Shown here: positions 16,932-56,371 of the stretch, piece after piece
How positions within the stretch are numbered: position 1 is the first letter of the stretch
Layout: the number at the start of each line of letters is the position of its first letter
Translations under genes and position numbers: made by a program
The notes under the pieces: model-generated
The model's database searches: none
What the model was told of the DNA's origin: nothing
The model's input: only the letters and a program-made list of their open reading frames with translations
IMG/VR virus record: IMGVR_UViG_3300040801_002079
Coordinates: 124,001 to 188,000 of that record
Reading direction: 5' to 3' (one strand)
DNA length: 64,000 bases

Positions 16932-16999
16932 CTCAGTTTGGTTAGAGCAAGAGCTTCTAAAACTCATGGTCGTGGGTTCGAATCCCGCCCGGAGCGCCA
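16922..16999 (+). tRNA. tRNA with CUA anticodon in canonical register (putative amber suppressor), encoded CCA
   Basis: 7-bp acceptor GCTCCGG/CCGGAGC, D arm GCTC/GAGC, loop TT-CTA-AA (16955-16961), T arm GTGGG-TTCGAAT-CCCGC, G73, CCA; anticodon stem has two mismatches. Confidence 0.8.
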
Positions 17000-31315: not shown

Positions 31316-32476
31316 ATGCATAATTACGACTATATCGTATATATCGGGCGATTCCAGCCCTTCCATAATGGTCATCTGACCACGCTTATGAAAGCTCTGC
31401 GCTTGGGCCAAAAGGTTATCATGGTGCTAGGCTCTTCAAATTCCCCTCGAACCTATAAAAATCCTTGGACTTCTACTGAACGAGAAGTAATGATTCGCAG
31501 TTGCCTTAGTGCAACCGAGAACGAAGCATTAGAATTTGCTCATATAGAAGACCATCTTTATTCCAATGAGAAATGGTTACTTGATGTTCGTACCGAGGTG
31601 CGCAAGATCATTACCACCACTCGCACACAGATTGTTTTAAATGAAGATGATTATAATGATCCAAATTATAAACACTCTGTTGCCCTCATTGGGTATAACA
31701 AAGATGAATCCAGCTTTTATACTAAAGAGTTTCCGGATTGGCCCTTAATTGAAACGGGACCACATATTAAGGAAAGTACCGGGAAAGGGAAGCCAGTCGG
31801 ATCAACCATGATTCGCTTCTTAATGTTTACTGGCGATTTGGGATATGTTGAAAGCAACGTTCCTCCCGCCATCTATGCATTTCTTGAAAATTTTACCACC
31901 ACTGAGGACTTTCAGTATCTTCAGGACAGCTTCGACCACTACTACAACGAAGAAAAGCAGTACAAGGATTTACCATATTGGATGAATTTCTTCACCGCTG
32001 ATGCCGTAGTGGTACAGTCGAACCATGTCTTGCTTGGTAAGCGCAAACATCACCCCGGTAAAGGTCTTTGGGCTTTACCCGGAGGTCATGTTAGCGTAAA
32101 TGAAACTTCATATGAAGCCGCTTTGCGTGAACTTACCGAGGAAACTAGAATTAAAGTTCCAAAGGGTAAAATTATCGGTAGTATGGTAATGAATCGTCGC
32201 TTTGATCACCCCGCACGGTCTCTCAGATGTCGTGTAACGGGAAATCATGGTAGGACCGTAACCGATGCCTTCTTCTTTAAGCTTGACGGAGTAGCGTCAA
32301 GCGGAGAAGCAATACATTCACTCCCTAAAGTAAAGGGTGATGATGATTTAGAGGAAGCCCGCTGGTTCCCGCTAGATGAGGTTCGAAACATGCGCTCCGA
32401 GCTTTTTGAAGATCATTTGGACATTATTGAATATTTTGTAGATAGAGCACCCAAGGAGTCTACTTCTTCTTGGTAA
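31316..32476 (+). CDS. nadM: Bifunctional NMN adenylyltransferase / Nudix ADP-ribose pyrophosphatase (NadM-Nudix, NatV-like)
   Basis: IGRFQPFHNGH HxGH motif; Nudix box GGHVSVNETSYEAALRELTEET. Confidence 0.95.
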   Translation: MHNYDYIVYIGRFQPFHNGHLTTLMKALRLGQKVIMVLGSSNSPRTYKNPWTSTEREVMIRSCLSATENEALEFAHIEDHLYSNEKWLLDVRTEVRKIITTTRTQIVLNEDDYNDPNYKHSVALIGYNKDESSFYTKEFPDWPLIETGPHIKESTGKGKPVGSTMIRFLMFTGDLGYVESNVPPAIYAFLENFTTTEDFQYLQDSFDHYYNEEKQYKDLPYWMNFFTADAVVVQSNHVLLGKRKHHPGKGLWALPGGHVSVNETSYEAALRELTEETRIKVPKGKIIGSMVMNRRFDHPARSLRCRVTGNHGRTVTDAFFFKLDGVASSGEAIHSLPKVKGDDDLEEARWFPLDEVRNMRSELFEDHLDIIEYFVDRAPKESTSSW

Positions 32477-32505
32477 ATTAAACTAACCCATGTTACATAG
32501 GAGGT

Positions 32506-33957
32506 ATGAACATGAACACAACTTTTCTAAAATCAATTCTTAACGTACACGGTGCGAAGACCGATGGATACAAGTTTGATCATCACAAGCAGACTGTTCC
32601 CGGTATGACCAACGCCTTTTCTTACATCGAATCCCGAGGAACTAACTTGGATTGGGATAACCCCCGAACCCTGTTCTTTGGATTACAGATGTATCTTAAA
32701 GAGTATATGACTCAGCCTGTTACTCATGAAGATATCGATGCCATCATTCCCCTAGTGGAAAAATATGGTGTTGAATTCAACGAGAAGGGATGGAGACATA
32801 TTGTTGATGCCCATGGAGGCATTCTTCCATTGAAAATTCGGGCAGTTAAAGAGGGTACAGTGATGCCATTAAGTAATGTAATGGTGTCAGTTGAAGCCAC
32901 TGATCCCGAGTGCTACTGGTTAGCACCTTTCGTAGAAACTGCTTTGCTCCGTGCAGTGTGGTATCCAACCACGGTTGCATCCAATTCATTCCGCGCCAAG
33001 GAAATCATCAAAGGATTCTTGGATGAGACTGCTGATAACGGTGATCTTGAACTTCCGTTCAAGTTGCATGACTTCGGTGCAAGGGGTGTATCTTCCGCTG
33101 AAAGTGCACAGATTGGAGGTGCAGCACATCTTGTCAACTTCATGGGTTCTGATACCTTTGAGGGTGCGCTTGCAGCCATGTTGTATTACGACACTGATAT
33201 GCCAGCCGGTACGATTCCTGCTGCCGAACACTTCACCATTACCTCTTGGGGTCCAGAAGGTGAAACCAGTGCGTACCGAAATATGCTTCGGACTTTCGGT
33301 GGTCCTGATAAAATGCTTGCAGTGGTGTCTGATTCTTACGACATGTATAATGCTGCCGAGCATATTTGGGGTGAAGAGCTTCGTGATGACGTTATCAACA
33401 TGGGTGGAACCTTAGTGGTTCGTCCTGATTCTGGTGACCCACTGGTTGTTCCCGTTGATGTCATTGAAATTTTAATGGAGAAGTTTGGTTACACTATCAA
33501 CAAGAAGGGATACAAGGTTCTTCCTGATTGCATTCGAGTTATTCAGGGTGACGGTATCACCGTTGATAACATCAAAGCCATTCTTACTCGCATGAAGTCT
33601 CGTAAGCTTAGCGCATCTAATATTGCATTCGGAATGGGCGCTGGTCTGCTTCAGCAGGTTGACCGTGATACCTACAAGTTTGCAATGAAGTGTTCTGCAA
33701 AGGAAATCAATGGTCGATGGGAAGATGTTTGGAAAGACCCTAAGACTGATTCCGGTAAGAAGTCCAAGCGTGGTCGTGTCACGCTGGTACAGGATCGCAA
33801 TACAAAAGAGTTTAGAACCATTAGACTTGATGGGCCAACTTCTGTTAAGGAAACGGAACTAAATGTAATGCGAACTGTATATAATAACGGTGTTGTTGAG
33901 TCCGAGTTTCAGACGTTTGACGAAATTCGTGAACTTTCAAATTCGTACTTGAAATAA
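32506..33957 (+). CDS. nadV: Nicotinamide phosphoribosyltransferase
   Basis: TDGYKFDH, LHDFGARGVS, PAAEH, VVSDSYD, VVRPDSGDP, VIQGDG, FGMGAGLLQ; SD spacing favours ATG 32512. Confidence 0.96.
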   Translation: MNMNTTFLKSILNVHGAKTDGYKFDHHKQTVPGMTNAFSYIESRGTNLDWDNPRTLFFGLQMYLKEYMTQPVTHEDIDAIIPLVEKYGVEFNEKGWRHIVDAHGGILPLKIRAVKEGTVMPLSNVMVSVEATDPECYWLAPFVETALLRAVWYPTTVASNSFRAKEIIKGFLDETADNGDLELPFKLHDFGARGVSSAESAQIGGAAHLVNFMGSDTFEGALAAMLYYDTDMPAGTIPAAEHFTITSWGPEGETSAYRNMLRTFGGPDKMLAVVSDSYDMYNAAEHIWGEELRDDVINMGGTLVVRPDSGDPLVVPVDVIEILMEKFGYTINKKGYKVLPDCIRVIQGDGITVDNIKAILTRMKSRKLSASNIAFGMGAGLLQQVDRDTYKFAMKCSAKEINGRWEDVWKDPKTDSGKKSKRGRVTLVQDRNTKEFRTIRLDGPTSVKETELNVMRTVYNNGVVESEFQTFDEIRELSNSYLK

Positions 33958-34659: not shown

Positions 34660-35154
34660 ATGAAGATTAGAGAATTAAAAGAGAGCGCAGACTATCCGGA
34701 AATTATAGTTATGATAGGGCTTCCCGGTGTAGGGAAGAGTACCGTAATAAAGCGGGATTACCCAAACCATACAATCGTATCTTCGGATGATATTATTGAG
34801 AAATATGCTGCCGAAGAAGGAAAGACCTACGATCAGGTTTTTCAGAAATATATTGGGCAAGCTTCAGGCGAAATGAAATCAGTATTTCGCAGAGCAGTCC
34901 AGAATAATGAGAACATTGTCTGGGATCAGACAAATCTTTCCAAGAAGAAAAGGAGAGGTATACTGAGTCAGGTTCCTCGGCATTATAGAAAAGTTGCCGT
35001 GGTATTTGATGTCTCTGATAAAGTTCGTTATGAGCGAATGGCGCAGAGAGAAGGTAAGAGTATTCCTGCTCATGTAATACAGAGTATGGAAAAAGCGTAT
35101 CAGGCCCCAACCAAAGATGAGGGGTTTGATGAAATTAGAGTAATAAAGGAGTAA
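34660..35154 (+). CDS. AAA_33 P-loop kinase (polynucleotide-kinase-like module)
   Basis: MIGLPGVGKST, SSDDII, VWDQTN, lid R..R; MKIRELKE N-terminus. Confidence 0.8.
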   Translation: MKIRELKESADYPEIIVMIGLPGVGKSTVIKRDYPNHTIVSSDDIIEKYAAEEGKTYDQVFQKYIGQASGEMKSVFRRAVQNNENIVWDQTNLSKKKRRGILSQVPRHYRKVAVVFDVSDKVRYERMAQREGKSIPAHVIQSMEKAYQAPTKDEGFDEIRVIKE

Positions 35155-35160
35155 ATAAAA

Positions 35161-35769
35161 ATGGAAAACATGGTAAAGACTTCATTCACCGGACTGAATC
35201 GACTTCCTCAGATTCTAGCATTGAATAAGAGTGGTGAAGCAATGAGATGGATAGACTACGAAAAGTGTGCATATTACTATGCAAAAGATCGCGTACTGTG
35301 GAGTTTAGGACAGTATGAGGTTATTTTGCGCGGTGGTAGGAATGCGCTCACAGGTCAGCCGTCGATACTTACCATGGATTCCATTGTAGCTATTGACAGT
35401 GATCGTAGTCCAACAAAGTCTCGCAATTACACCTCTCCAGCATTGGAGAACAGACTTCTTTTCCGTAGAGATAAGAACATCTGTGCGTATTGTGGACACC
35501 GCTATGGTAGCAACCAGTTAACTCGTGATCACGTTACTCCACGTTCTCGTGGTGGTAAGAACACTTGGGATAACGTTGTTACCGCTTGTAAGGGATGCAA
35601 CCAGTGGAAAGCAGACAGTATGCTTAATGAACTTGATTTAAAGTTGATTTATGTTCCATACACCCCTACATACAATGAGCACTTGATTCTCAAGAATCGC
35701 AAGATACTTGCAGACCAAATGGAATTTCTTATGAAAGGTGTTGGTAAGAACAGCAGACTGTTGTCTTAA
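35161..35769 (+). CDS. HNH endonuclease (McrA-like/HNH_5)
   Basis: CAYCG...TRDHVTPRSRGG...NVVTACKGCN. Confidence 0.9.
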   Translation: MENMVKTSFTGLNRLPQILALNKSGEAMRWIDYEKCAYYYAKDRVLWSLGQYEVILRGGRNALTGQPSILTMDSIVAIDSDRSPTKSRNYTSPALENRLLFRRDKNICAYCGHRYGSNQLTRDHVTPRSRGGKNTWDNVVTACKGCNQWKADSMLNELDLKLIYVPYTPTYNEHLILKNRKILADQMEFLMKGVGKNSRLLS

Positions 35770-35843: not shown

Positions 35844-36416
35844 ATGGATTTACATGAATTTAATAAAAATGCAATAAAAACAGAGTCTTTAGTCGATACT
35901 GTAATTACAGATAGAGCTATTTTAATGGAATCTTTGGTTGCCTTTGAGCAGGTATCAGAATTATTGGATGCATTAAAAAAGAGTGCTTTTTATAATAAAC
36001 CAATAGATGTTGAGAAGCTTATGGGTTCAGCCGATTCAATCAATAAAATTGGATATGTACTCTCAAATGAAGACATATGGGAAATAGGGGCGACAAAAAA
36101 TGACGATATTAACCCTCGTTTATTCCATGCCATAATTGGAATTTTAACTGAAGCGGGTGAACTTGCAACAATATTGATAAATCACTTGCAGGGCGAAGAA
36201 TTGGATACAGTCAACATGCTAGAAGAATTTGGCGACATTGCATGGTATCAAGCAATCGCATATGATGAATTGAATGTTGATCCATACCATCCACTGGTAG
36301 CAGTGATTAACAAACTAAGGGCTAGATACCCAAACAAGTTTACTTCAGATGATGCTATAAATCGTGATGTAGACAGTGAGCGGGCTATACTTGAGGATTC
36401 CTTAAAGGGTGAATAA
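35844..36416 (+). CDS. MazG-like nucleotide pyrophosphohydrolase
   Basis: GILTEAGEL...EEFGDIAWY...KLRARYPNKF. Confidence 0.85.
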   Translation: MDLHEFNKNAIKTESLVDTVITDRAILMESLVAFEQVSELLDALKKSAFYNKPIDVEKLMGSADSINKIGYVLSNEDIWEIGATKNDDINPRLFHAIIGILTEAGELATILINHLQGEELDTVNMLEEFGDIAWYQAIAYDELNVDPYHPLVAVINKLRARYPNKFTSDDAINRDVDSERAILEDSLKGE

Positions 36417-37044
36417 AATGAGACCAGTATGTTTAGTAGATTTAGATGACACATTGGGTGATTTAAAAAATCCAATGATGAAAGCTCTTAATCGATCAAC
36501 CGGAAAGGACATTCATTGGTCGGAGTGGTACACATACAATGTTCCAACATTATATGATATATCCGATGATGCATTTATGGACATATTGATTAATGAGCAT
36601 GTTATTGAGAATTTAGAGATACATCAATCAAGTTATAAATTTCTGAATGATTTGCACTTATTGGGGTATTATACAGTATTGATAACCGCAAGAGGGTGGC
36701 ACCCAAGAGGAAAAGAAATAACCGAAGAATGGGTCAGTGATTATAATTTGGATATTGATGAACTTATCGTGGTTGAACATGATCAAAGTAAAACGGATGT
36801 AATTTCCGGGTTTAATAATATTGTATTTTCGATTGATGATAGAATAAAACATTGTCGAGAATACATGAGAACTGGGCGCATTCAACATGTTTTGGTATAT
36901 GATGCCCCATGGAATACACATATGACGAAACACAACCCATTCGTGGGCGGGGATGATTATCATCAAAGAATTTTTGATCTACATGAAATTATAGAGCACG
37001 TTGAATGGTGCGATAATAAAAGGAGAGTTTCAAATGTTTGCTAA
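36409..37044 (+). CDS. HAD-family 5'-nucleotidase (NT5C-like), second copy
   Basis: LVDLDDTL, LITARG, SIDDR, DAPWN. Confidence 0.82.
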   Translation: MNKMRPVCLVDLDDTLGDLKNPMMKALNRSTGKDIHWSEWYTYNVPTLYDISDDAFMDILINEHVIENLEIHQSSYKFLNDLHLLGYYTVLITARGWHPRGKEITEEWVSDYNLDIDELIVVEHDQSKTDVISGFNNIVFSIDDRIKHCREYMRTGRIQHVLVYDAPWNTHMTKHNPFVGGDDYHQRIFDLHEIIEHVEWCDNKRRVSNVC

Positions 37045-37327: not shown

Positions 37328-37911
37328 TGACTCTAGGTGAACCTGATCAGTGCATTTGTGGTAGAACCGTTTCAGGGTTCAGTACGTGCCCTGTTCACGG
37401 TGATAAATGGTTTGGGACGGGTACCCCAAATGAAAACAATGATAATAAGCCATTTCCAGCGTTATACTATTTAATCCCCGAAGGGGACTATTGTTATAGA
37501 CGGACAGGTAGAGTTGTTATAGATAACCGTGTATGGGATGATGATGAATACAAATATGTTTCATACTATTTTAAGCCTGAAACAAAACTCTGCTCATTCT
37601 GGAAATCCATAGGTGATGGGAATGCTCTTTGCACTTACATGAATGAAATAAGCTATCAGAGTGAATGCAATAATCTGGTATGGGATCAAGTAAAGGAATG
37701 TGGGGTTCGTGTGGCAGACTACAGTTTAGACGAACTTGAGCACATGAGGGACAATGATCCAGATTGGTACAAGGCCACAAAACGCCAAAAGAAATTTCCA
37801 CAATTTATGGAAAGTCTTGTTACTATCCTAATGGACTCAGAAACAAATGAACTGACTTATGATGGAATTACTTACACCCTAAGTCAGCACATTTATGATA
37901 GTGGCAATTAA
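37327..37911 (+). CDS. Cys-rich hypothetical protein
   Basis: CICG...CPVH, YYLIPEGDYCY, LVWDQVKECG. Confidence 0.6.
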   Translation: MTLGEPDQCICGRTVSGFSTCPVHGDKWFGTGTPNENNDNKPFPALYYLIPEGDYCYRRTGRVVIDNRVWDDDEYKYVSYYFKPETKLCSFWKSIGDGNALCTYMNEISYQSECNNLVWDQVKECGVRVADYSLDELEHMRDNDPDWYKATKRQKKFPQFMESLVTILMDSETNELTYDGITYTLSQHIYDSGN

Positions 37912-38660
37912 GCTGTTACTCCCGCTTCTTCCAGTGCACAAATCCAAGATTTAACAAAGGCGCTTCTAACAATGTCATCGGGCCTGAACGTAACTTGGTC
38001 AAACCCTTCCATACGTTCAACAACATTTAGAAACTCTCTCATACCAGACTGATCATTCTTTTTACGATAAAGATCGGTCTGAATCTGATCACCAATTATG
38101 ATTAACTTGGAATTTGCACCAACTCTGGTTATGACTGAGTTAATTTCATAGAAAGTCATATTTTGAACTTCGTCAATTATTATAACAGCGTCATCCCATG
38201 TTAGACCTCTTACAAATGATGTAGGAACAAACTTGACAATTTTTTGTTTCTTCATTTTTTCGTATGCGGTTGGTCTGCCGAATAGGTCAGAGAATATGTC
38301 ATTATATGGGGTCTCGTAGACCTCCATTTTTTCAGCGTCATCACCGGGGAGGAATCCTATGTCCCTAGAGGCTACTGCGCTTCGGACAATTATCATGTTG
38401 TCCTGTTTTGATTTCTTTGATAGGACATCTGTTAATCCCAGATAAATTGCTGCGTAGGTTTTTCCTGTTCCTGCTGAGCCGTTTGCTAAAATGTTATTAC
38501 CGTAAAAGTAAGATTCAAACATTTGGTGTTGAGGGGTGTTTATTGGTTTTATTGATTTTAAATCATTTATTGTTAGGCGTTTTGATTCTTTGAAATCTTG
38601 AAGTGCCTGTACGTCATTTTCTATAACTTTCATAGTGCATCGCTTTGACTTTCTACTCAT
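37908..38660 (-). CDS. phoH: PhoH family ATPase
   Basis: GSAGTGKT, GFLPG, RGLTW, IIDEVQN, IGDQIQTD, DIVRS. Confidence 0.95.
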   Translation of the reverse strand: MSRKSKRCTMKVIENDVQALQDFKESKRLTINDLKSIKPINTPQHQMFESYFYGNNILANGSAGTGKTYAAIYLGLTDVLSKKSKQDNMIIVRSAVASRDIGFLPGDDAEKMEVYETPYNDIFSDLFGRPTAYEKMKKQKIVKFVPTSFVRGLTWDDAVIIIDEVQNMTFYEINSVITRVGANSKLIIIGDQIQTDLYRKKNDQSGMREFLNVVERMEGFDQVTFRPDDIVRSAFVKSWICALEEAGVTA

Positions 38661-39122: not shown

Positions 39123-39455
39123 ATGAAAACAATAAACGAAAGAGCCGATATTATATCAAACACTTTTCAGAATAAAGCACTTAGCTTTCTTAAAGGAATG
39201 GAAGAACGAATGGGGAATGATTTGATTTATTCTCTAGCTCTTGAAGCTGGAAATGTTTTTCTCTGCGTTGCTGCACACCCATCAATGACACCAAAACGCT
39301 GGGACACAGAGCGGGAACGTATTCTGTTCTTAATTGATGAAGAGGAATATGGAATGGATCAAGATGAACTTATTGAGGTTCTCTCTGAGCGCCTAGAAGA
39401 TCATATGTATTATGTCACTGCGGGACCCGAAGAAAATGAAACTGAGACATCTTAA
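39123..39455 (+). CDS. hypothetical protein
   Basis: late promoter 39095-39101, GAGG SD. Confidence 0.65.
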   Translation: MKTINERADIISNTFQNKALSFLKGMEERMGNDLIYSLALEAGNVFLCVAAHPSMTPKRWDTERERILFLIDEEEYGMDQDELIEVLSERLEDHMYYVTAGPEENETETS

Positions 39456-40029
39456 GCCCGTACCACAAACCGACTATGATCCGCGTGATCCAATTGGAAC
39501 AGTGTATACATTTAGACATCCCGATGGTATGCGTGGCACCGTAACTGTATTAGAAAAAATTGAAGATGAAGCCTCAGGGGTATTTGTCGGAGTGAAGTTT
39601 TCCGAGGAAACCAATGATGCCATAATGAATTTTATTGAATCTCAGGATATCCCAAATCCTGTAACAAAAGATAAACTACATTGTACTGTTATGTACACAT
39701 ATAGTGATGCCCCTGATTTAATTGAAGAAAGTAGACCCCCTCTTATCCCCGCATGGAATGCTACACCGGATAAATTTGAAATATTTGAAACACAGGATGA
39801 TAATAATTGCTTGGTTTTAAGAATAAAATGTGATGAACTAACCGAAAGGCATGAGAAAATCATAGCGGATTACGGAGTTGTTTATACGCACGAGGAATAC
39901 AAGCCACATATAACATTATCATATGATTGTGGAGATTTCGATATTTCAACGTTGGACAAAGATGCGTTACCTGATGAAATCCTTATAACAGAGGAGTATG
40001 CATCATCGATTGATCCAGACTGGGTATAG
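39436..40029 (+). CDS. acb1: Anti-CBASS nuclease Acb1 / T4 gp57B-like 2H phosphoesterase with N-terminal extension
   Basis: VGVKFSEET...IPNPV...KLHCTVMY...YKPHITLSY...EEY...DPDW follows T4 gp57B along its length. Confidence 0.85.
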   Translation: MKLRHLKPVPQTDYDPRDPIGTVYTFRHPDGMRGTVTVLEKIEDEASGVFVGVKFSEETNDAIMNFIESQDIPNPVTKDKLHCTVMYTYSDAPDLIEESRPPLIPAWNATPDKFEIFETQDDNNCLVLRIKCDELTERHEKIIADYGVVYTHEEYKPHITLSYDCGDFDISTLDKDALPDEILITEEYASSIDPDWV

Positions 40030-40031
40030 TG

Positions 40032-40038
40032 ATAAATA
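40032..40038 (+). promoter_or_regulatory. T4-type late promoter driving the tmRNA
   Basis: ATAAATA just after the acb1 stop and before the acceptor piece. Confidence 0.7.
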
Positions 40039-40043
40039 AGTAT

Positions 40044-40328
40044 AACATTGTACGATCCATTTAAGGATTTATTGTGGACGGCGGTTCGATTCCGCCCATT
40101 TCCACCAAAAGCATACCTAATGGGTATATTTTATGATGGGAATGCACTGGTTTCGACATGGTAAGTTGGTAAATGAGGACAATGCGGCAACCGTGAAAGT
40201 CGTTAGGGTAAAACCAAAGAAGCAAAAAACTAAATGCAAACGATAGCATATATGATCAGGCCCTTGCCGCTTGATCGTGGGTTTAGCCAACCTTGAACCA
40301 GAACGGGTTAGGGGGGAGTAATCCCCCC
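40044..40328 (+). ncRNA. ssrA: Circularly permuted (two-piece) tmRNA; tag ANDSIYDQALAA
   Basis: acceptor piece with T arm and CATTTCC-A-CCA ends at 40107; coding piece starts GGGAATG at 40138 (G3:U70, A73); tag frame 40236-40274; terminator 40311-40328; late promoter 40032-40038. Confidence 0.9.
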
Positions 40329-40351
40329 GAATTTTATCAAAAGGGACTTCT

Positions 40352-41107
40352 ATGAATCACGCAAAAAATGATGAGACTTACAACGATAACAATAATAACA
40401 ATGAACAGCCTCTTTTTCCATTTTTACCTAACAGGGAACAAATAAGGTCCTTTAAAAGAACCATCCCAGTAGCGGTCTATGACTTCTACATTACTGATGA
40501 AATAAAAGAACCAGATGTGTACATGGAGTTAATTCAAACTCTTAAAAGTGCTGATCCTCAGGATACAATTTTCATCTATTTAAATACTCCGGGCGGGAGC
40601 CTCTATACTACCATTCAGATAATGTCGGCAATCACTAGCTCACAGGCAAAGGTCATAACATGCCTTGAAGGGCAGGCATGTTCTGCTGGAACATTCATTT
40701 TCTTAGCGGGAGACACTAAAATAGTTAATCCCCACTGTACGTTCATGGTTCATAATTATAGCCAAGGAGCAAGTGGTAAGGGTAACGAAATTGTATCCCA
40801 TGTTAATTACATGGATCGATATTTTAAAAGACTAGCTGAAGATGTATACACTGAGTTTTTAACCAAAACTGAGTTGGAATCCGTTATTAAGGGTGATGAC
40901 ATGTGGATGGATTCACACGAACTGGTGAAAAGATTAGATGCCAACAACCATGACTACATCTACACGGGCCAAGATTTGGATGAAATATTAGGCAGAGACC
41001 CTGATGAGATTTCAGATGAAATGGAAGATGCTTCTAAGCCCAAACAAAGGGCAAAAAAGAAAGTAACTAAGAAAAAAGCTTCGAGGAAAAAAACCGCGTC
41101 TGATTAA
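40352..41107 (+). CDS. clpP: ClpP-like serine protease with Lys-rich C-terminal tail
   Basis: YLNTPGGS, ACSAG (Ser), FMVHN (His), DMWMDSHE. Confidence 0.9.
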   Translation: MNHAKNDETYNDNNNNNEQPLFPFLPNREQIRSFKRTIPVAVYDFYITDEIKEPDVYMELIQTLKSADPQDTIFIYLNTPGGSLYTTIQIMSAITSSQAKVITCLEGQACSAGTFIFLAGDTKIVNPHCTFMVHNYSQGASGKGNEIVSHVNYMDRYFKRLAEDVYTEFLTKTELESVIKGDDMWMDSHELVKRLDANNHDYIYTGQDLDEILGRDPDEISDEMEDASKPKQRAKKKVTKKKASRKKTASD

Positions 41108-41145: not shown

Positions 41146-42156
41146 ATGAATTATGAGTGCATTGAAGATGTAGTCAGAGAGCATGTTGCATTTAAAAATG
41201 TGTCAGCATCTGGCTGGAACCAAGCATATTGTGAATATTGTGGCGATGGCGGGAGAACCAAGGGTCCCCGTGGTAATTGGCTATTTGATGGTGATATGCT
41301 ATTCTTCAATTGCTATAATTGTGGAACCAAAGCAAATTTTGATCCTCACAGGGAGATACCATTTAGTAAGCACATGCATGGTGTCTTCAAGGCTCACGGA
41401 ATCCCATTAAAGTTCTGTTATGCGTTAATCCCCAAAGATGCTAATGCCGAAACTAGGGAAGTTAAGCCTCAAAAACTTAAATTTGATTCATTTGAATTAC
41501 CGGATCATTTTTATAAACTATCAAGTGCAGCAATGGATGACAAAAAAGCAATCATTGCTCGTGAACATTTAATAAACAAACGTAAAATTGATCCGGACGA
41601 TTTCCCGTTTTATCTATCAAGCGGAGTTACACAATCATCTAGCCCTAAAGATATAAGTTTGGCTAAGACATTTCAGCAAAGACTTATAATTCCATCATAT
41701 GTCAATGATACATTAATTGGGTATGAGGGAATGGCCCTATATCCAAATAAAAACAAATATATAACAATTGGTTCTAATTTGGTACACGGCTATTCTAATA
41801 TTTTCAGGGAAGAGGGGCATGTGCCACTGTTTGTAACTGAAGGATTTTTTGATTCATATCATGTAAATGGAGTCGCATTGTGTACAAACTCCTTAAGTAA
41901 TAAGCATATAGAGCTTCTGGAAAAGACATCTAGGCCCAAGGTTGTTATACCGGATAGGAAGAATACACATAACGCTTTAGCTGAAGAGGCACTTAATCTT
42001 GGATGGGGCGTGTCGCTACCCGAAATAAAGCCATATAAGGATATTTCAGAGGCAATTGAGCACTATGGTGTATTTTTCGTATTAAATTCGGTTATGAAAT
42101 CCATAAAATACGGGGATAGTGGAAAAATTTATTTAAAAATATATAATGTTGCATAA
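41146..42156 (+). CDS. DNA primase (T4 gp61-like)
   Basis: zinc ribbon CEYC...CYNC; TOPRIM FVTEGFFDS, VVIPDR, KDISE; TTGACC-17-TATAAT promoter upstream. Confidence 0.85.
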   Translation: MNYECIEDVVREHVAFKNVSASGWNQAYCEYCGDGGRTKGPRGNWLFDGDMLFFNCYNCGTKANFDPHREIPFSKHMHGVFKAHGIPLKFCYALIPKDANAETREVKPQKLKFDSFELPDHFYKLSSAAMDDKKAIIAREHLINKRKIDPDDFPFYLSSGVTQSSSPKDISLAKTFQQRLIIPSYVNDTLIGYEGMALYPNKNKYITIGSNLVHGYSNIFREEGHVPLFVTEGFFDSYHVNGVALCTNSLSNKHIELLEKTSRPKVVIPDRKNTHNALAEEALNLGWGVSLPEIKPYKDISEAIEHYGVFFVLNSVMKSIKYGDSGKIYLKIYNVA

Positions 42157-42957: not shown

Positions 42958-44547
42958 ATGAAATTAGAATTTAGACAGGGCTTAGTCCAAATACAATCTA
43001 CACCACCATTTATAACTACATCGGGCGGCAGTGTAAGTCTAAATTCGTCTGTAACCGATAATATTGTAACATTTGCACACGGTGAAGATAATTACCTTTT
43101 TATAGAATCTAATGATCTTCCCGGTGCATGGACGGGTCCATTCGGGGCTGGAACAACGTGGCTCTATTGGAATCTGGATATAGAGACTGGAGTAAGAACC
43201 TTCGGAAGTACCACTCTTGACCCAACTGGATATGGAGATGATATGCCATCCAGTCCAGTAATGGGTGAAATGTTCTTTTCAACATTAGAAAATAAAATGA
43301 AGGAATGGAATGGTTATAAATGGGTAACCGTTCTGCGTGTACTTGCAGGGGAAATAACTGGGGGAACATTAACGCCATATAGCGAAGGATCACAAATCTC
43401 AGATGATTTTCAAGCATATGCAGGATATTTGCTTTTTGATGAAAATGGAAATCCATTTAAAGAATCTGATCCATTTAATCGTGGTCATTTTGTACATACT
43501 GAGACAAGGCTTAAAGCACAAAATACACCACTCAATCAATACGAGCAAAGAAATACCGAATATTCATATACATCGGATACATCAATACCTGAGGGTTATT
43601 GTGTAGCACTGATAGAAGACAAAACTCTAACCGTTGCATCATATAGAAAGCCTGAAAGACCATGTATTGGAATATCATTAATGGACTTATATGCTGGTGA
43701 TATGGGCAGGTATGTGACGGAGGGGGTGCTGACCTTTGAGGGCTGGAATTTTGATTCCGTACCTAATACCCCTGTTTGGGTTGGACCAAATGGAGAAGTT
43801 ACCACCACTGTACCAACCGAAACTTCAATTCAGAGGTTAGGGTTTGTGGTTTCAAAAAACAGTATACTATTGGATATAAGAGAGCCGGTTTTACTAGACC
43901 CATCTTATAAGGACTGCTTTGTTCCATCACCAACTCCAACTCCAACTCCAACTGTTACACCAACCATTACTGCAACCGTTACACCCACGGCGACAGTTAC
44001 ACCAACTGTTACAGCTACGGCATCTGTTACACCAACTGTTACCCCAACTACTACAGTTGATCCAACAGTAACACCAACTGTTACAGCCGCTATTACACCA
44101 ACACCAACAGTAACACCAACAGTTACCCCAACTATGACGGTAACGCCTGAAGTTAGCCCATCACCAACAACAACTCCTGCTCCATCTGCTGAGGCCACAC
44201 CAACCCCAACTGTTACTTCAGGATTAACTCCAACTGTTACTCCAACTTCTACAGTTACACCAACAATTACTTCAACTGCGGAAGTAACACCAACCCCAAC
44301 AGCTACGACTGGTCTAACACCAACAGTTACACCAGAGGTTACACCAACGAATACGGTAACACCTCCCGTTACACCAACAGTTACTCCATCTTTATCTGTT
44401 GGGGCATCCCCCACACCTACTCCAACGGTTACACCAACGAACACGGCAACAACTACACCTACCCCAACAGTTACGCCGACAATGACAGTAACCCCAACTC
44501 CTTCCCCATTAAGCGGATTGAAGACACTCTTTATTGACTGGACATAA
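42958..44547 (+). CDS. Virion fibre/decoration protein with about 190-aa TPTV mucin-like stalk
   Basis: late promoter 42926-42932; C-terminal third is nearly pure T/P/V/A/S. Confidence 0.8.
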   Translation: MKLEFRQGLVQIQSTPPFITTSGGSVSLNSSVTDNIVTFAHGEDNYLFIESNDLPGAWTGPFGAGTTWLYWNLDIETGVRTFGSTTLDPTGYGDDMPSSPVMGEMFFSTLENKMKEWNGYKWVTVLRVLAGEITGGTLTPYSEGSQISDDFQAYAGYLLFDENGNPFKESDPFNRGHFVHTETRLKAQNTPLNQYEQRNTEYSYTSDTSIPEGYCVALIEDKTLTVASYRKPERPCIGISLMDLYAGDMGRYVTEGVLTFEGWNFDSVPNTPVWVGPNGEVTTTVPTETSIQRLGFVVSKNSILLDIREPVLLDPSYKDCFVPSPTPTPTPTVTPTITATVTPTATVTPTVTATASVTPTVTPTTTVDPTVTPTVTAAITPTPTVTPTVTPTMTVTPEVSPSPTTTPAPSAEATPTPTVTSGLTPTVTPTSTVTPTITSTAEVTPTPTATTGLTPTVTPEVTPTNTVTPPVTPTVTPSLSVGASPTPTPTVTPTNTATTTPTPTVTPTMTVTPTPSPLSGLKTLFIDWT

Positions 44548-46780: not shown

Positions 46781-47339
46781 TCTGTTGCCCAATCAAGTGT
46801 AACTGTAGAACAATAAGTAATGAGTAAGGTATCGTATGAGACTTACGCATATCACTATTTATCCGCTTAGTGTATAATTCTGGGCGAATAGCTTCCGGGT
46901 TCTCTAAATATTTTTCCAGCAGGCCAATCTTTCCGGGCCTAATTAATGCTAGAATGTCTGATAATTGCTGAACACTTCGGGGCTTCACTTTCTCCACAAT
47001 GTCAAAATGTTTACCAATATGGAATAACCCGCTAACAATTTTTTCACTTTCAAGTAGTGTCCAATCCGGCTCTTGCTTCAAAAGTGCCCGCATTTGAGCC
47101 TTACTCTTAAACTCTTTCAAGAGATTAAGATGTAGTAAATCAATCTTCAAGAAACCAACATCCTCAGCCTCTTTATAGGGTATGGCAGATAATTTAGTTT
47201 CGGGGTCTACAGGAATTTGCTGAAAATAAACACCAGCAGGGTGTTTTCTCAGTTTACCATCTTCGTTCATTGAGGCATAAACTAAATCAAAAACATCACT
47301 GGGATTAAAATCCGGGCGTAGATCGATATCAATGTCCAT
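46764..47339 (-). CDS. DNA polymerase III alpha (DnaE)-like fragment, C-terminal palm half
   Basis: begins MDIDIDL (catalytic DxD), KHPAGVYF, GFLKIDLL, ALIRPG, KSHTIPY. Confidence 0.85.
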   Translation of the reverse strand: MDIDIDLRPDFNPSDVFDLVYASMNEDGKLRKHPAGVYFQQIPVDPETKLSAIPYKEAEDVGFLKIDLLHLNLLKEFKSKAQMRALLKQEPDWTLLESEKIVSGLFHIGKHFDIVEKVKPRSVQQLSDILALIRPGKIGLLEKYLENPEAIRPELYTKRINSDMRKSHTIPYSLLIVLQLHLIGQQNENTT

Positions 47340-48069
47340 AATTCATTTCTATTTCTCGTTTTGTAACTATTAAATCTTCAACGCTTTCACAAAAGTTTAT
47401 CTTACTTTCATAATGTAGCATATTATACTCTTCCTGTAAAGCGAAGTTGTATTGCTGATCCTTCATGTCAAGTAAGTAAATAATAGTGTCATTGATGTTA
47501 AAGTTTTTTAACCTCATAGTCAATTCGAAAAATGGAAATTTAGAAATATCTATATCTGTTATAGGATTAAGAGATGATATCAATCCTCTCAATTGATTCA
47601 TATTCATGTCTTCGATATAAAAATCATCATCTAATCTGCTTAGCGTGATCGCTATAATGTCCAAAGCCTCTTGATATTTTTCTTCCAGATTTGGAGAAAA
47701 TCTAAAACTTATTCTTTCATTGTAATACTCGACAAGCTTTTGATGTAAGAATTGTTTTCCTGATTCAACATCCTTTAAAGACATATTAGATGAATAGTCT
47801 ATTAATATAAGACCACGTTCTTCTTCTAATTTATTAAGCTTTTCCTTATATTCTGAAATATTCTCAACAGAAAATCTATCAAGATTGCGCAAAGACTCTC
47901 TCCAATTGACCCATTGATTGCGAGATTGTGATGTAAGAGGGACATCCTGTAGTTGTGTCCAGTCACTTTCCAATAGGAGTCTGTTGCGTCTAGCAATAAG
48001 GCTGACCCATTTTATTTCTTCTTGATTTTTTGACTGCGAATATTTTAAATTCTTTATCTTTTTTATCAT
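47329..48069 (-). CDS. Phage tail assembly chaperone (Phage_tail_APC-like N-terminus)
   Basis: RNRLLLESDWTQLQDVP...WVNWRESLRNL. Confidence 0.75.
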   Translation of the reverse strand: MIKKIKNLKYSQSKNQEEIKWVSLIARRNRLLLESDWTQLQDVPLTSQSRNQWVNWRESLRNLDRFSVENISEYKEKLNKLEEERGLILIDYSSNMSLKDVESGKQFLHQKLVEYYNERISFRFSPNLEEKYQEALDIIAITLSRLDDDFYIEDMNMNQLRGLISSLNPITDIDISKFPFFELTMRLKNFNINDTIIYLLDMKDQQYNFALQEEYNMLHYESKINFCESVEDLIVTKREIEMNYGH

Positions 48070-48082
48070 GTCAAGGTCTACA

Positions 48083-50383
48083 TTATGCTGGCTTAAAGAA
48101 GAAATATACCGTGGCCCGTGTTAGGGTTGCATCGTATGTTGTCCAAACCGCAGGGAATGAAAGATTTGATGATCCGTAACTAGTCACTATACTCTGATTT
48201 ATATAGTTAGTGTTCTCAGCTTCATTATAATAAACCCTATAAAATGTTCGCAAATAATTGACCACATATCCATCAGGAACATTTATATCAAATCCAGTTA
48301 CATCTCCGTCATTGCCATCAATATCACTCGTTATAGATAAAGAGAACTTTTCACCGTCAACGAAGGTCGTGGTCCTACTTCCAAACGAACTGGTTCCTCC
48401 GGTTTGTCTAATATCTGCACTTAACGTAAATGATCTTTCTGGAGTCGGCGTTGGGGAAGGGCCATCTGGTGGTGGGGTTCCATCTATGTTCCAACAGAAT
48501 TGATTTAAATAATTACATATGTTTTTGCCTTCCATCCATCTAGTAGCAAAATCACCTGAAAATGAATCATTATGTATTATCTGAACCGCGCCATCTGGTA
48601 ACAACGCCGCACTATCGAATGTTACATCATTCATACTGAAGGTTCTAGTTCCCAAATTACAATTTCCGCTTCCATCAGAAACTCCTATATTTGTATACCC
48701 CATTGGTTGAGTTGAAGACTCACCAATCATTGCTAATAACTGATTTCCTGTAATTCCCACGGGTTCAAATATAAAGAGCCATTTTCTTCCGGGTCCACCA
48801 ATTTCTTGTAGATATAACCCAGCTTTACATATAGCATATTCCGATGTAGTTCTAGACATAGAACCAAAATTATCATTATAATTATTATATCCAACTACTC
48901 TTGTCGCGTTAGAGAAAATTTGCCCAGCCGGAACGGTGTCGCCTTCGGCTGGTGTTATAACGGAGCAACTTCCTGTAACAGGAGCATCATCTACTCCATC
49001 ATGATCCCAGCTTGAGTACCAATATGTCAATGTTCCGGGCGATGAAGGGAATGGCCCCTCAGTCCCCGGATTTGTTAAGTTTGTTCCACCCGCAGCACAT
49101 CCACCAACATATCCAACCGAACTAATATCAGATGATCCGGGTATCCACCATTGTCGGGTATTGCCAACACTATCAGTGAGAATAACTCTACCGTGGAATC
49201 TTACGGTCATGCTATAATTATTTTCAGTATTAAATTCCGCGCTATCAAATTTCAAACGAATATATGGTATTTCTCCGGGGGATATATTTGTACGCAATGA
49301 TCCAGTTCCGTCTCCACCGAAATAACTCTTTAAGACTGTGCTGAGGGGATATGCCGACCCCTGATAGTACGTGCCTCCACTTCCAACCTCAACTAAGCCA
49401 GAGGGATCACTTGTGGGAGATTGAATAGTGGCGAATACATTTTGGAAATCAACAGTGTAAGGTGGGACCCCACCACTAATGTTTTGTAATGAAAAATATG
49501 TACTCTGATCATATGCACTTTTTGCAACATTACCCTCAGTATCGATGTGTGATGTGTTCGTTCCGCCTCCGGGTCCGGGAGTTCCGGGATCACATGGTGC
49601 GGGAGATACATAGAGTCGCGTATCGACTCCTAATGGCTCTACTGGCTCGGGAGTATCGGTTGGAGTCGGTGATACCGGAGGTGAGGGGGGAGGCGTTCCT
49701 GCGGGGCTGCTAGTTGGTGTGACTGTAATTCCCACTGGAGGGGTTGGGGTTGGAGTAACCTCTGGTAAATCTGGGGGAGTAACCTGTTGCCCCAGATTGT
49801 TATTGCCGCGTATTCCTATAATTAAATAGTTTACGTAAGATTCAATAGTAGTGGTATCTCCTAACACCTTATAGTGCATGGTTACTCTTGCTTCAGAGTC
49901 AGTACCACAAGTCATTCCAGAAAATCCGGAATTATATGCTGCGGGTGCTACTGACCATATACATTCAGAGTATTCAAACTCTCGGCCCGTTACAGGGCTA
50001 ATGGGTTTAGGCAATTGCTGACCATGATATACTGTTCCCCAGTTTGCTGCAACATCATCGTAACTTGATATTGGAATCCAATATGTTCCATCCCAAAAAT
50101 ATAGCACACCAGATGTTGAGTTATACCAAAACTGTCCATGGGTTGGGTTAACAAGCAAATTCTCATGACTTTGCGATGTGTCGGGTGTTCCGGGAACAGA
50201 TGGGTTTTCAGGGCAAGCAAAATTTTCTAGCAAGTGTAATAGATTTTCATTAAGATATTCACCATATTCTAGATTTATTCTTCCAAACATAGCAACATCA
50301 ACAGAGGTTCTATTAACATCACCCTGTTTAACTTCTATTGGACTAGCACTAACTTGTGTAAAATCTATTTTATATGTTGACAT
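48083..50383 (-). CDS. Virion fibre protein, paralog 4 of tandem array
   Basis: shared FGR..LEYGE.LNENLLHLLENFACPE module, PT linker, unique C-terminus. Confidence 0.8.
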   Translation of the reverse strand: MSTYKIDFTQVSASPIEVKQGDVNRTSVDVAMFGRINLEYGEYLNENLLHLLENFACPENPSVPGTPDTSQSHENLLVNPTHGQFWYNSTSGVLYFWDGTYWIPISSYDDVAANWGTVYHGQQLPKPISPVTGREFEYSECIWSVAPAAYNSGFSGMTCGTDSEARVTMHYKVLGDTTTIESYVNYLIIGIRGNNNLGQQVTPPDLPEVTPTPTPPVGITVTPTSSPAGTPPPSPPVSPTPTDTPEPVEPLGVDTRLYVSPAPCDPGTPGPGGGTNTSHIDTEGNVAKSAYDQSTYFSLQNISGGVPPYTVDFQNVFATIQSPTSDPSGLVEVGSGGTYYQGSAYPLSTVLKSYFGGDGTGSLRTNISPGEIPYIRLKFDSAEFNTENNYSMTVRFHGRVILTDSVGNTRQWWIPGSSDISSVGYVGGCAAGGTNLTNPGTEGPFPSSPGTLTYWYSSWDHDGVDDAPVTGSCSVITPAEGDTVPAGQIFSNATRVVGYNNYNDNFGSMSRTTSEYAICKAGLYLQEIGGPGRKWLFIFEPVGITGNQLLAMIGESSTQPMGYTNIGVSDGSGNCNLGTRTFSMNDVTFDSAALLPDGAVQIIHNDSFSGDFATRWMEGKNICNYLNQFCWNIDGTPPPDGPSPTPTPERSFTLSADIRQTGGTSSFGSRTTTFVDGEKFSLSITSDIDGNDGDVTGFDINVPDGYVVNYLRTFYRVYYNEAENTNYINQSIVTSYGSSNLSFPAVWTTYDATLTRATVYFFFKPA

Positions 50384-50413
50384 CTATTATTCCCAATTAT
50401 CTGTATTTATCCA

Positions 50414-51784: not shown

Positions 51785-51802
51785 TCGATCCTCACCTTAT
51801 AC

Positions 51803-53353: not shown

Positions 53354-53526
53354 TATACTTCCTCATAACTGTCAATCTTTGAATGTATCATGTCGGATTT
53401 AAATTCGCCGTCTGATATCTCAAAGACTTCAATTCCCGAATCTGCTGAATTTTGCGCCGATACCCGCTTTTGTGCAGTTCCTATAATAACTTGTTCTCCA
53501 TCGATTTCTTTAACCAATAAAAACAT
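53353..53526 (-). CDS. 57-aa small protein missed by the ORF track ([16 protein letters not shown]...)
   Basis: ATG at 53526 overlaps the upstream stop; its TAA overlaps the downstream ATG (TAATG). Confidence 0.65.
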   Translation of the reverse strand: MFLLVKEIDGEQVIIGTAQKRVSAQNSADSGIEVFEISDGEFKSDMIHSKIDSYEEV

Positions 53527-56067: not shown

Positions 56068-56371
56068 TAACTGTTAGCCGTTTATTGCAGAACTTACACA
56101 GAACATAGTCTCCACGATTTACTAAAAACTCCCGTGGATGTACACATTCTTTTGCAAGAAGATCACGTAATGCAATAAGTTCGTCAAGATGGACCTGTCG
56201 CTCCATTGTCAATTCGAGAATCTTTTCTTCTATCGGTTGAATATTCTCTTCAATCATGGTGGTCATCTTTTTATGCTTTCGTTTCCATGCAATACGTTCA
56301 TTCTTTGTAGCATGGTTTACAATTTTGGTAAATAATTCTTTGTCCGTCACGGCAATCTCCTTATATGTCAC
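56054..56371 (-). CDS. hypothetical protein
   Basis: coiled coil plus C-terminal ECVH...CKFC. Confidence 0.6.
   Translation of the reverse strand: MTYKEIAVTDKELFTKIVNHATKNERIAWKRKHKKMTTMIEENIQPIEEKILELTMERQVHLDELIALRDLLAKECVHPREFLVNRGDYVLCKFCNKRLTVNEQD

What the first reader, a model, noticed from the sequence alone, without database searches (positions are those of the whole stretch)
40032..40328. Phage-encoded circularly permuted two-piece tmRNA under a late promoter
Seen: the 3' half of a tRNA-like domain (T arm GGCGG-TTCGATT-CCGCC, CATTTCC, A, CCA; ends 40107) comes before a 30-nt spacer and the 5' half (GGGAATG-CACTGGTTTCGAC, 40138). The halves form a 7-bp acceptor stem with the G3:U70 alanine determinant and A73. 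A resume-type frame GCA AAC GAT... encodes ANDSIYDQALAA-stop (40236-40274), and a GC hairpin closes the unit. Established: permuted tmRNAs are known from alphaproteobacteria, some cyanobacteria, some betaproteobacteria and jakobid mitochondria; the phage tmRNAs I know of are mostly one-piece. Inference: either an independent permutation or capture from a host with a permuted gene. No SmpB is in this window.
Basis: partly seen in the sequence, partly recalled or inferred. Interest (0 to 1): 0.88.

Follow-up and report, generated by a model that had tools for sequence, protein, structure and literature searches.

The report
Phage-borne two-piece (permuted) tmRNA gene
A 317-kb uncultivated jumbo phage carries an intact circularly permuted ribosome-rescue RNA (tmRNA) of the betaproteobacterial type; the call is right, but dozens of phages are already known to carry such genes, so it is a new example, not a new kind.

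Summary
ARAGORN calls a permuted tmRNA with the tag ANDSIYDQALAA. Rfam hits tmRNA_permuted (123 bits, E 1e-23) and beta_tmRNA (98.6 bits, above its gathering score).

The acceptor stem (G3:U70 kept in 18/18 relatives), the T arm and the inter-piece P2 helix are supported by compensatory changes. The window is part of a 316.8-kb IMG/VR phage contig distantly related to Xanthomonas jumbo phages XacN1 and Xoo-sp13.

An ATAAATA motif 7 nt upstream is a real gene-start motif in this phage (20 of 81 genes, against 1-8 for permuted controls). It also precedes metabolic genes, so "late" is not established. No SmpB is in the window, so host SmpB is presumably used.

The RNA belongs to the existing beta-type permuted lineage. 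That favours capture or phage-to-phage inheritance over a fresh permutation. Its nearest relative (65% identity) lies in another uncultivated phage.

Permuted tmRNAs in phages are published: 53 of 133 unique phage tmRNAs in one survey, including Stenotrophomonas, Caulobacter jumbo, Bordetella and cyanophages. The only unusual trait is position. The gene sits directly upstream of a ClpP-family protease with no promoter in between, and just after an Acb1-like gene. That arrangement was seen in no other locus examined.

The parts
40032..40038 (+). ATAAATA promoter-like motif, 7 nt upstream of the start of the covariance-model match
   Evidence: The motif lies in sense within 60 nt upstream of 20 of 81 crude genes, against 1-8 for the 20 same-composition permutations. 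No sigma-70-type site is called here. Timing is not established.
40046..40107 (+). Acceptor piece (about 62 nt): P2 strand 40046-40076, T arm 40080-40096, acceptor 3' strand 40097-40103, discriminator A 40104, encoded CCA 40105-40107
   Evidence: Rfam RF04321 alignment. Covariation on 18 sequences: T arm 98.9% paired and acceptor stem 97.6% paired. The 5' end is inferred from the motif and the model boundary; it was not mapped.
40108..40137 (+). 30-nt intervening spacer removed during maturation; it contains a small hairpin (ATACC/GGTAT)
   Evidence: Direct reading. In the precursor fold the spacer hairpin stacks on the acceptor stem. Spacers in relatives vary in length and sequence.
40138..40184 (+). 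5' end of the coding piece: acceptor 5' strand GGGAATG (40138-40144), D-loop analogue CACTGGTTTCGA (40145-40156), P2 strand (40157-40184)
   Evidence: alignment. MFE cofolding of the two pieces recovers the 7 intermolecular acceptor pairs. P2 outer helix 40046-50/40180-84: 88.9% paired, 5/5 pairs with compensatory changes. P2 inner helix 40070-76/40157-63: 96.3% paired, 5/6.
40185..40235 (+). Hairpin 40185-40202 (CGGC/GUCG) at the pseudoknot-1 position, and the A-rich lead-in AAGCAAAAAACUAAAU before the resume codon
   Evidence: Rfam alignments. AAGCAAAA..UAAAUGCAAAYGA is shared with other beta-type genes. A true pseudoknot 1 was not demonstrated.
40236..40274 (+). Tag reading frame: GCA resume codon to TGA, ANDSIYDQALAA-stop
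   Evidence: ARAGORN, direct reading, and alignment to the model's tag region.
40279..40328 (+). Post-tag hairpin 40284-88/40306-10 with loop CCUUGAACCAGAA (possible pseudoknot with GGUU 40280-83), and terminal GC hairpin 40311-40328
   Evidence: beta_tmRNA model alignment. Terminator-like site with only a weak, displaced T tract (GAATTTTAT).
40352..41107 (+). ClpP-family serine protease gene, 24 nt after the hairpin; possibly co-transcribed (a neighbour, not part of the RNA)
   Evidence: Pfam CLP_protease 2e-21 and phrog_1827 4e-59. Ser (GQACSAG) and His (MVHNYS) align with the ClpP catalytic residues of PDB 8r04. No promoter-like site or ATAAATA lies between the tmRNA and the ATG.
39412..40029 (+). 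Upstream neighbour: Acb1-like 2H phosphoesterase; its TAG stop lies 3 nt before the promoter motif
   Evidence: Pfam PF23474 Acb1 1.2e-33 and phrog_755 1.3e-37.

Best explanation
This is a functional ssrA gene of the betaproteobacterial-type permuted form, resident in a jumbo phage genome.

Shown:
- The gene order is P2 strand, T arm, acceptor 3' strand with ACCA, a 30-nt spacer, acceptor 5' strand, D-loop analogue, P2 strand, tag frame, pseudoknot region, terminal hairpin.
- Every tRNA-like-domain helix is kept.
- The tag ends in ALAA followed by a stop codon.

Inferred:
- A precursor of about 290 nt starts near 40045, downstream of a phage-specific ATAAATA motif.
- Host RNase P cuts before G40138, and 3' trimming exposes CCA40107.
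- This gives an acceptor piece of about 62 nt and a coding piece of about 190 nt, held together by the 7-bp acceptor stem and the P2 helix.
- Host AlaRS charges the RNA through G3:U70 and A73. Host SmpB (none is in the window) and EF-Tu deliver it to ribosomes stalled on broken mRNAs.
- Translation resumes at GCA and appends (A)ANDSIYDQALAA. The AAND..Y and LAA-COOH determinants then send the product to ClpXP/ClpAP-type proteolysis.

Likely benefit to the phage: it keeps ribosomes free and recycles amino acids while host and phage mRNAs are being degraded. The adjacent phage ClpP homologue, probably transcribed by read-through, may add degradation capacity.

Origin: captured from a bacterium, or passed between phages, within the existing beta-type permuted lineage.
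For: - ARAGORN calls a permuted tmRNA.
- Rfam: RF04321 at 123.3 bits and RF01850 at 98.6 bits, both above gathering score.
- Covariation across 18 beta-type genes supports the acceptor stem, T arm and long-range P2. G3:U70 is invariant in 18/18. A rival local leader hairpin is only 52.7% paired.
- The cofold recovers the acceptor stem, with z = -3.1.
- The context is a phage: Acb1, ClpP, primase, PhoH, HNH, helicase and clamp loader. The contig is a 316,801-bp IMG/VR entry. ClpP-primase synteny is shared with XacN1 and Xoo-sp13.
- The promoter motif is enriched at gene starts.
- Cultured phages DLP_6, Marzo (annotated tmRNA), BUDD and PHB04 carry beta-type permuted tmRNAs that score in the same range.
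- The nearest relative is embedded in phage genes in L005/L007: 65% identity, support 97/93.
- The gene is 43% GC, against 50-61% in bacterial relatives and 38.9% for the window. This is consistent with long residence in a low-GC phage.
- Phages with tmRNA generally lack SmpB.
Against: - There is no expression, processing, charging or tagging data.
- The host is unknown.
- Pseudoknot 1 is weak or undemonstrated.
- The minimum-free-energy fold prefers a local leader hairpin to P2.
- The beta_tmRNA score is only 15 bits above threshold and lower than that of bacterial members, which score 165-281 bits.
- No close relative was found to show purifying selection on this particular gene.
- Only 64 kb of the 317 kb could be checked for SmpB.
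Confidence: 0.85

Rival explanations
1. Inert passenger or relic: a tmRNA gene picked up with host DNA (for example through an integrative element that targets ssrA) and carried without function.
For: tmRNA genes are common integration sites, and fragments of them occur in phages (PMC9004378). The gene is a singleton, with no close relative to show conservation. XacN1 and Xoo-sp13 lack it at the syntenic site.
Against: The whole gene is present with every helix, the G3:U70 pair, CCA, an open tag frame with a canonical ALAA end and a stop. It sits behind a phage gene-start motif. Its GC content has drifted towards that of the phage. No integrase turned up among the roughly 50 window ORFs that were scanned.
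Confidence: 0.07
2. A modulator rather than a rescuer. In this reading the RNA competes with host tmRNA for SmpB, as the tRNA-like-domain-only RNA of mycobacteriophage DS6A is thought to do. Alternatively it re-labels stalled products with a phage-specific tag so that their fate differs.
For: No SmpB is in the window, so the RNA must draw on host SmpB. The DS6A precedent is cited in PMC4131195. The tag differs internally from typical proteobacterial tags (SIYDQ), and two extra residues separate AAND..Y from LAA.
Against: Unlike DS6A, this gene has a complete mRNA-like domain. The tag keeps both the N-terminal AAND..Y determinant and the C-terminal LAA determinant of normal degradation tags, so normal tagging is the simpler reading.
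Confidence: 0.05
3. An independent circular permutation of a one-piece tmRNA that arose inside the phage lineage.
For: It is divergent: at most 65% identity to anything found, and a beta_tmRNA score close to threshold.
Against: It shares beta-type traits outside the tRNA-like domain with other beta-type genes. These are the 5' leader/P2 layout, AAGCAAAA..UAAAUGCAAAYGA before the tag, the post-tag loop CCUUGAACCAGAA and a terminal hairpin. Of the clan CL00001 families (which include beta_tmRNA and the standard one-piece tmRNA, per the clan column), beta_tmRNA was the match kept at this site; the lower-scoring overlapping match was not named. It groups with another phage beta-type gene.
Confidence: 0.03

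Closest known systems
Betaproteobacterial-type two-piece tmRNA (Rfam RF01850; Sharkady and Williams 2004, cited in PMC9004378)
   Same: Permuted gene order, helix set, D-loop analogue GGUUUCGAC, lead-in to the resume codon, AND-type tag ending in AA, one post-tag hairpin/pseudoknot and a terminal hairpin.
   Different: It is on a phage, not a chromosome. It is much more AT-rich. It scores 98.6 bits, against 165-281 for Azoarcus, Cupriavidus and Gallionellaceae genes. It carries extra sequence in the pseudoknot-1 region and a longer tag with SIYDQ.
Permuted tmRNAs of cultured phages: Stenotrophomonas phages DLP_6 and Marzo/Moby/Mendera, Xanthomonas phage BUDD, Bordetella phage PHB04 (beta-type); Caulobacter phiCbK-like and jumbo CcrSC/CcrBL9/CcrPW, pelagiphages, Melnitz and cyanophages (other types)
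   Same: A phage-borne, two-piece form, with no SmpB nearby. RF01850 and RF04321 scores are in the same range: 94.6-103.7 and 77.5-136.8 bits.
   Different: In DLP_6, Marzo and PHB04 the gene sits among tRNA genes. Here it stands alone between Acb1 and ClpP, 23 kb from the only tRNA in the window. There is no DNA-level match to any of them. The tags differ.
tmRNA of uncultivated phage contigs IMGVR_UViG_3300006108_000041 and 3300025387_000292 (L005/L007)
   Same: Nearest sequence found: 65% identity over 203 columns, sister in the tree with support 97/93. It is flanked on both sides by phage genes: exonuclease, HNH, endolysin and helicase loader. It is low in GC.
   Different: The tag is different (ANDAFYEEFALAA) and so are the neighbours. 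The pairing may partly reflect shared AT-richness.
Chromosomal permuted tmRNAs of Stenotrophomonas species (L019, L023, L031, L038)
   Same: They share GCACUGGUUUCGACRUGG and a tag beginning AN(D/E)S(I/V)YDQ, as in L019 ANESVYDQPQERELLVA.
   Different: They are 58-61% GC, with longer tags and a conserved chromosomal setting beside a TonB-dependent receptor. They do not group with the window in the tree.

Membership tests
tmRNA (ssrA), permuted two-piece form | Circularly permuted order: the T arm and acceptor 3' strand with CCA come before the acceptor 5' strand and the tag frame, with a spacer between | tested here: met
   ARAGORN flags the permuted form, and RF04321 is matched over its full length (model positions 1-213).
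tmRNA (ssrA), permuted two-piece form | 7-bp acceptor stem with the G3:U70 alanine identity pair, discriminator A, and CCA | tested here: met
   by direct reading. The cofold recovers the 7 intermolecular pairs. G:U is present in 18/18 relatives and the stem is 97.6% paired.
tmRNA (ssrA), permuted two-piece form | T arm with a GGTTCGAnTCC-type loop, and a D-loop analogue (GGUUUCGAC) that contacts SmpB | tested here: met
   Invariant columns in alignment A1. T arm 98.9% paired, with 3 of its 5 pairs changing on both sides. SmpB contact itself is established knowledge and was not tested.
tmRNA (ssrA), permuted two-piece form | P2 helix joining the two pieces | tested here: met
   Outer helix 88.9% paired, with 5/5 compensatory pairs. 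Inner helix 96.3% paired, with 5/6. The middle of the helix is not alignable. The alternative local hairpin is 52.7% paired. The MFE fold alone does not recover P2.
tmRNA (ssrA), permuted two-piece form | Resume codon GCN followed by a short frame that ends in hydrophobic residues and a stop | tested here: met
   GCA at 40236, tag ANDSIYDQALAA, TGA at 40272-40274. The region aligns to the tag region of both models.
tmRNA (ssrA), permuted two-piece form | Pseudoknot 1 upstream of the tag | tested here: inconclusive
   A 4-bp hairpin at 40185-40202 matches the model hairpin. By eye only about 3 bp are available for the second stem. The covariance models do not encode pseudoknots.
tmRNA (ssrA), permuted two-piece form | Processing into two RNAs, alanylation, SmpB-dependent tagging | not testable with these tools
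   Needs Northern blot or RACE, in vitro charging, and mass spectrometry.
Beta-type subfamily (RF01850) | Score above the curated gathering threshold, with the clade-specific 5' and 3' elements | tested here: met
   98.6 bits against a gathering score of 84, over the full model length (1-331). It was the match kept within its clan at this site. The margin is small, and the post-tag stem has mismatches.
Complete phage trans-translation module (tmRNA plus SmpB, as in some huge phages, PMC7162821) | A phage-encoded SmpB | tested here: not met
   There is none in the 64-kb window. The other roughly 253 kb of the contig could not be read.
T4-type late promoter | TATAAATA at -10, used only for late (structural) genes through a gp55-type sigma factor | tested here: inconclusive
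   ATAAATA is enriched at gene starts. The base before it is G here and varies elsewhere. The motif also precedes metabolic genes. No gp55 homologue was looked for.

The most novel reading that the evidence does not exclude
The tmRNA and the ClpP gene 24 nt downstream may form one phage transcription unit, a self-supplied tag-and-degrade module. It is placed among counter-defence and RNA-repair genes (Acb1, NAMPT plus NMNAT/Nudix NAD salvage, polynucleotide-kinase-like proteins). Its role would be to rescue ribosomes stalled by host abortive-infection nucleases that cut mRNA or tRNA. The two extra residues between the AAND..Y and LAA determinants might also tune adaptor-mediated delivery. The adjacency was seen only once, in none of the other 71 loci, so it may be coincidence.
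Probability: 0.12. Interest if true: 0.6.

Novelty: new member of a known kind. Interest (0 to 1): 0.27.

Why it matters
This adds one more case, a divergent beta-type one in a 317-kb uncultivated phage, to the published list of phages that carry two-piece tmRNAs. It shows that the first-stage reader can recognise a permuted tmRNA from raw sequence.

Scientifically it matters little on its own, because the function of any phage tmRNA is still untested. The tmRNA-ClpP juxtaposition gives a small, concrete hypothesis. The compact 300-nt gene could serve as a test article for asking what phage tmRNAs do.

Tried and rejected
1. TAG recoding linked to the amber-suppressor tRNA at 16922. With the standard code, 90 crude genes cover 95.9% of the window and 16 end in TAG. 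Reading TAG as sense lowers coding density. The apparent ATG-ACA-TAG start at 17911 is a two-codon ORF and is out of frame with the next gene. Rejected.

2. DNA-level relatives in the phage collection. None was found for the tmRNA or for 20 kb around it.

3. Close relatives of this tmRNA in metagenomes. A signature scan returned only Stenotrophomonas-type chromosomal copies.

4. A tmRNA at the syntenic site of XacN1 or Xoo-sp13. Absent.

5. ClpP, Acb1 or primase next to other permuted tmRNAs. None in 71 loci.

6. A sigma-70 promoter upstream. None passes the scan.

7. The thermodynamic fold as evidence for P2. The MFE fold prefers a local leader hairpin, and only comparative data support P2.

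8. The Stenotrophomonas copies as prophage cargo. Their flanks look chromosomal: TonB-dependent receptor, hydrolases.

9. Alpha- and cyano-type model scores could not be seen separately, because overlapping clan matches are collapsed.

10. The rest of the contig could not be fetched, so the absence of SmpB holds for the window only.

Full report
**Observation.**
- T arm: GGCGG-TTCGATT-CCGCC, 40080-40096.
- Acceptor 3' strand: CATTTCC, 40097-40103.
- Discriminator: A at 40104.
- CCA: 40105-40107.
- Spacer: 30 nt, 40108-40137.
- Acceptor 5' strand: GGGAATG, 40138-40144, followed by CACTGGTTTCGAC.
- Tag frame: GCA...TGA at 40236-40274, encoding ANDSIYDQALAA.
- GC hairpin: 40311-40328.

The seven acceptor pairs include G3:U70.

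Two independent detectors agree. ARAGORN calls a permuted tmRNA with that tag. Rfam 15 gives tmRNA_permuted RF04321 at 123.3 bits (gathering score 47, E 1.3e-23). It also gives beta_tmRNA RF01850 at 98.6 bits (gathering score 84, E 9.7e-29), each over the full model length.

**Structure.** I aligned the tRNA-like domain and P2 region of 18 beta-type permuted tmRNAs from phages, viral contigs and bacteria. I then counted pairs for the structure read off the window.

| Element | Cells paired | Changes on both sides |
|---|---|---|
| Acceptor stem | 97.6% | 2 of 7 pairs; G:U third pair in 18/18 |
| T arm | 98.9% | 3 of 5 pairs |
| Outer P2 helix (40046-50 with 40180-84) | 88.9% | 5 of 5 pairs |
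| Inner P2 helix (40070-76 with 40157-63) | 96.3% | 5 of 6 pairs |

- All slid-register controls fall to 41-56% paired.
- The middle of P2 does not align.
- Thermodynamic cofolding of the two predicted pieces recovers the seven intermolecular acceptor pairs and the T arm (z = -3.1). It folds the leader locally instead of forming P2.
- That local hairpin is only 52.7% paired across relatives, so the comparative evidence favours P2.
- A hairpin at 40185-40202 sits where pseudoknot 1 belongs, but I could not show a second stem.
- After the tag, a hairpin (40284-88 with 40306-10) whose loop reads CCUUGAACCAGAA, and the terminal GC hairpin, match the beta model.

**Context.** The window is part of IMGVR_UViG_3300040801_002079, a 316,801-bp contig from JGI metagenome 3300040801. 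It is 38.9% GC.

| Coordinates | Gene |
|---|---|
| 39412-40029 | Acb1-like 2H phosphoesterase, immediately upstream |
| 40352-41107 | ClpP-family protease, immediately downstream; aligned Ser and His |
| 41146-42156 | Primase-like |
| 37908-38660 | PhoH |
| 35161-35769 | HNH |
| 60572-62092 | Helicase |
| 56361-57308 | Clamp loader |
| 31316-33957 | NMNAT/Nudix (31316-32476) and NAMPT (32506-33957) |
| several | Tail-fibre-like paralogues |

The closest cultured phages by ClpP are the Xanthomonas jumbo phages Xoo-sp13 and XacN1 (about 43% amino-acid identity) and Stenotrophomonas phages CM1 and RAS14. ClpP-primase synteny is kept in XacN1 and Xoo-sp13, but neither has a tmRNA there. Low GC does not exclude a Xanthomonadaceae host, because Xanthomonas jumbo phages of 35-37% GC exist (PMC11273794).

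**Promoter.**
- No sigma-70-type site is called upstream.
- ATAAATA at 40032-40038 lies 7 nt before the model match.
- In this window the heptamer occurs in sense within 60 nt upstream of 20 of 81 crude genes. The 20 same-composition permutations score 1-8. It is therefore a real gene-start motif, and it resembles the T4 late promoter TATAAATA.
- It precedes a deoxyribonucleotidase-like gene and a kinase-like gene as well as tail-fibre-like genes. "Late" is therefore an analogy, not a result.
- Neither this motif nor any promoter-like site lies between the tmRNA and the ClpP start. The terminal hairpin is followed by GAATTTTAT, not a clean T tract. ClpP is probably transcribed by read-through, but that is an inference.

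**SmpB.** E. coli SmpB finds nothing in the window; the best E-value is 2.3. In the phage collection SmpB occurs in 68 of 50,697 records. These are mostly prophage-edge sequences and Lak-type huge phages, and none is listed from Stenotrophomonas, Xanthomonas or Caulobacter phages. Dependence on host SmpB is thus the usual condition for tmRNA-bearing phages. The remaining roughly 253 kb of the contig could not be examined.

**Origin.**
- A pattern scan found 12 other IMG/VR contigs and 24 bacterial contigs with beta-like permuted tmRNAs.
- The window shares features outside the tRNA-like domain with them: the lead-in AAGCAAAA..UAAAUGCAAAYGA, the post-tag loop and the terminal hairpin.
- In a maximum-likelihood tree it pairs with L005, at 65% identity and support 97/93. 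L005 and its identical copy L007 are flanked by phage exonuclease, HNH, endolysin and helicase-loader genes. Shared AT-richness may inflate this pairing.
- The window also shares GCACUGGUUUCGACRUGG and the tag start AN(D/E)S(I/V)YDQ with chromosomal copies in Stenotrophomonas species.
- All of this points to capture or phage-to-phage spread within the existing beta lineage, not to a fresh permutation.
- The GC content (43%, against 50-61% in bacterial relatives) suggests long residence in AT-rich phages.

**Comparison with what is known.**
- Phage-borne permuted tmRNAs are published. Buchholz et al. 2022 (PMC9004378) describe the two-piece tmRNA of phage Melnitz.
- The same paper counts 53 two-piece genes among 133 unique phage tmRNAs. 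Those marked permuted in the part of its Table S1 that I read include Stenotrophomonas phages Mendera, Moby and YB07, Caulobacter phiCbK-like and jumbo CcrSC/CcrBL9/CcrPW, Bordetella PHB04, and several cyanophages and pelagiphages.
- I confirmed beta-type permuted genes in DLP_6, Marzo (annotated as tmRNA), BUDD and PHB04. Their Rfam scores are in the same range as the window's.
- Huge phages with tmRNA and SmpB are reported in PMC7162821.
- The Rfam permuted model and the 79 phage entries of the tmRNA database are described in PMC11915505.

**Verdict.** This is a correct and careful call of an ordinary kind of object: a new, divergent member of a known class.

Its one distinctive trait is position. 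It stands alone between an anti-CBASS-type phosphoesterase and a ClpP gene that it probably shares a transcript with, rather than inside a tRNA cluster. That adjacency occurred in none of the other 71 loci I held. With a single instance it is a hypothesis, not a finding.

Noticed in passing
window 16922-16999 (+): A tRNA with anticodon CUA, an amber suppressor. ARAGORN labels it 'Pyl' from the anticodon alone; Rfam tRNA score is 61 bits. The window shows no TAG recoding: 16 of 90 genes end in TAG, and reading TAG as sense lowers coding density. Its amino-acid identity and purpose are unknown.
   Followed up: partly
L004 672-2024, L010 10780-12132 (IMG/VR contigs 3300009768_000026 and 3300025597_000014; L014 has the same tmRNA): A permuted tmRNA with the long tag ANDAYFVAPAVSAARELRLAA lies within about 1 kb of two amber-suppressor tRNA-CUA genes. 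The window's phage also combines a tmRNA with a suppressor tRNA. A link (read-through into 3' ends raising demand for ribosome rescue) is conceivable but was not tested.
   Followed up: no
L019, L021, L023, L029, L031, L038 and metagenome loci L046-L056: Several Stenotrophomonas species carry a beta-type permuted tmRNA with long tags such as ANADYYDQNEQDTLLAA. It sits in a conserved chromosomal setting beside a TonB-dependent receptor. I did not check whether it is an extra copy alongside a standard tmRNA.
   Followed up: partly
L017 1-115 and 396-718 (Gallionellaceae MAG DMCN01000098.1): The 3' third of a standard one-piece tmRNA (RF00023 positions 256-374) lies about 280 nt upstream of a complete permuted tmRNA. 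This could be an element that integrated into ssrA and carries its own permuted copy.
   Followed up: no
window 31316-33957 (+), 34660-35154 (+), 36409-37044 (+), 39412-40029 (+): The 9 kb upstream of the tmRNA holds a run of likely counter-defence and RNA-repair genes: NMNAT/Nudix plus NAMPT (an NAD salvage pair), two polynucleotide-kinase-like proteins and an Acb1-like phosphoesterase.
   Followed up: partly
window 48083-54893 (-), plus 7433-12055 (-), 20574-21170 (-), 42958-44547 (+): Four tandem paralogues share the N-terminal domain of phrog_15511 (E 1e-90 to 1e-110), and further genes carry a piece of the same family. They lie next to a tail-fibre-assembly-chaperone-like gene (47329-48069). 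This looks like a diversified tail-fibre or receptor-binding set.
   Followed up: no
window 39456-40351 (L058 2105-3000): The JGI gene calls list no gene between 39455 and 40352. The Acb1-like ORF (Pfam E 1e-33) therefore appears to be unannotated in the source record.
   Followed up: no
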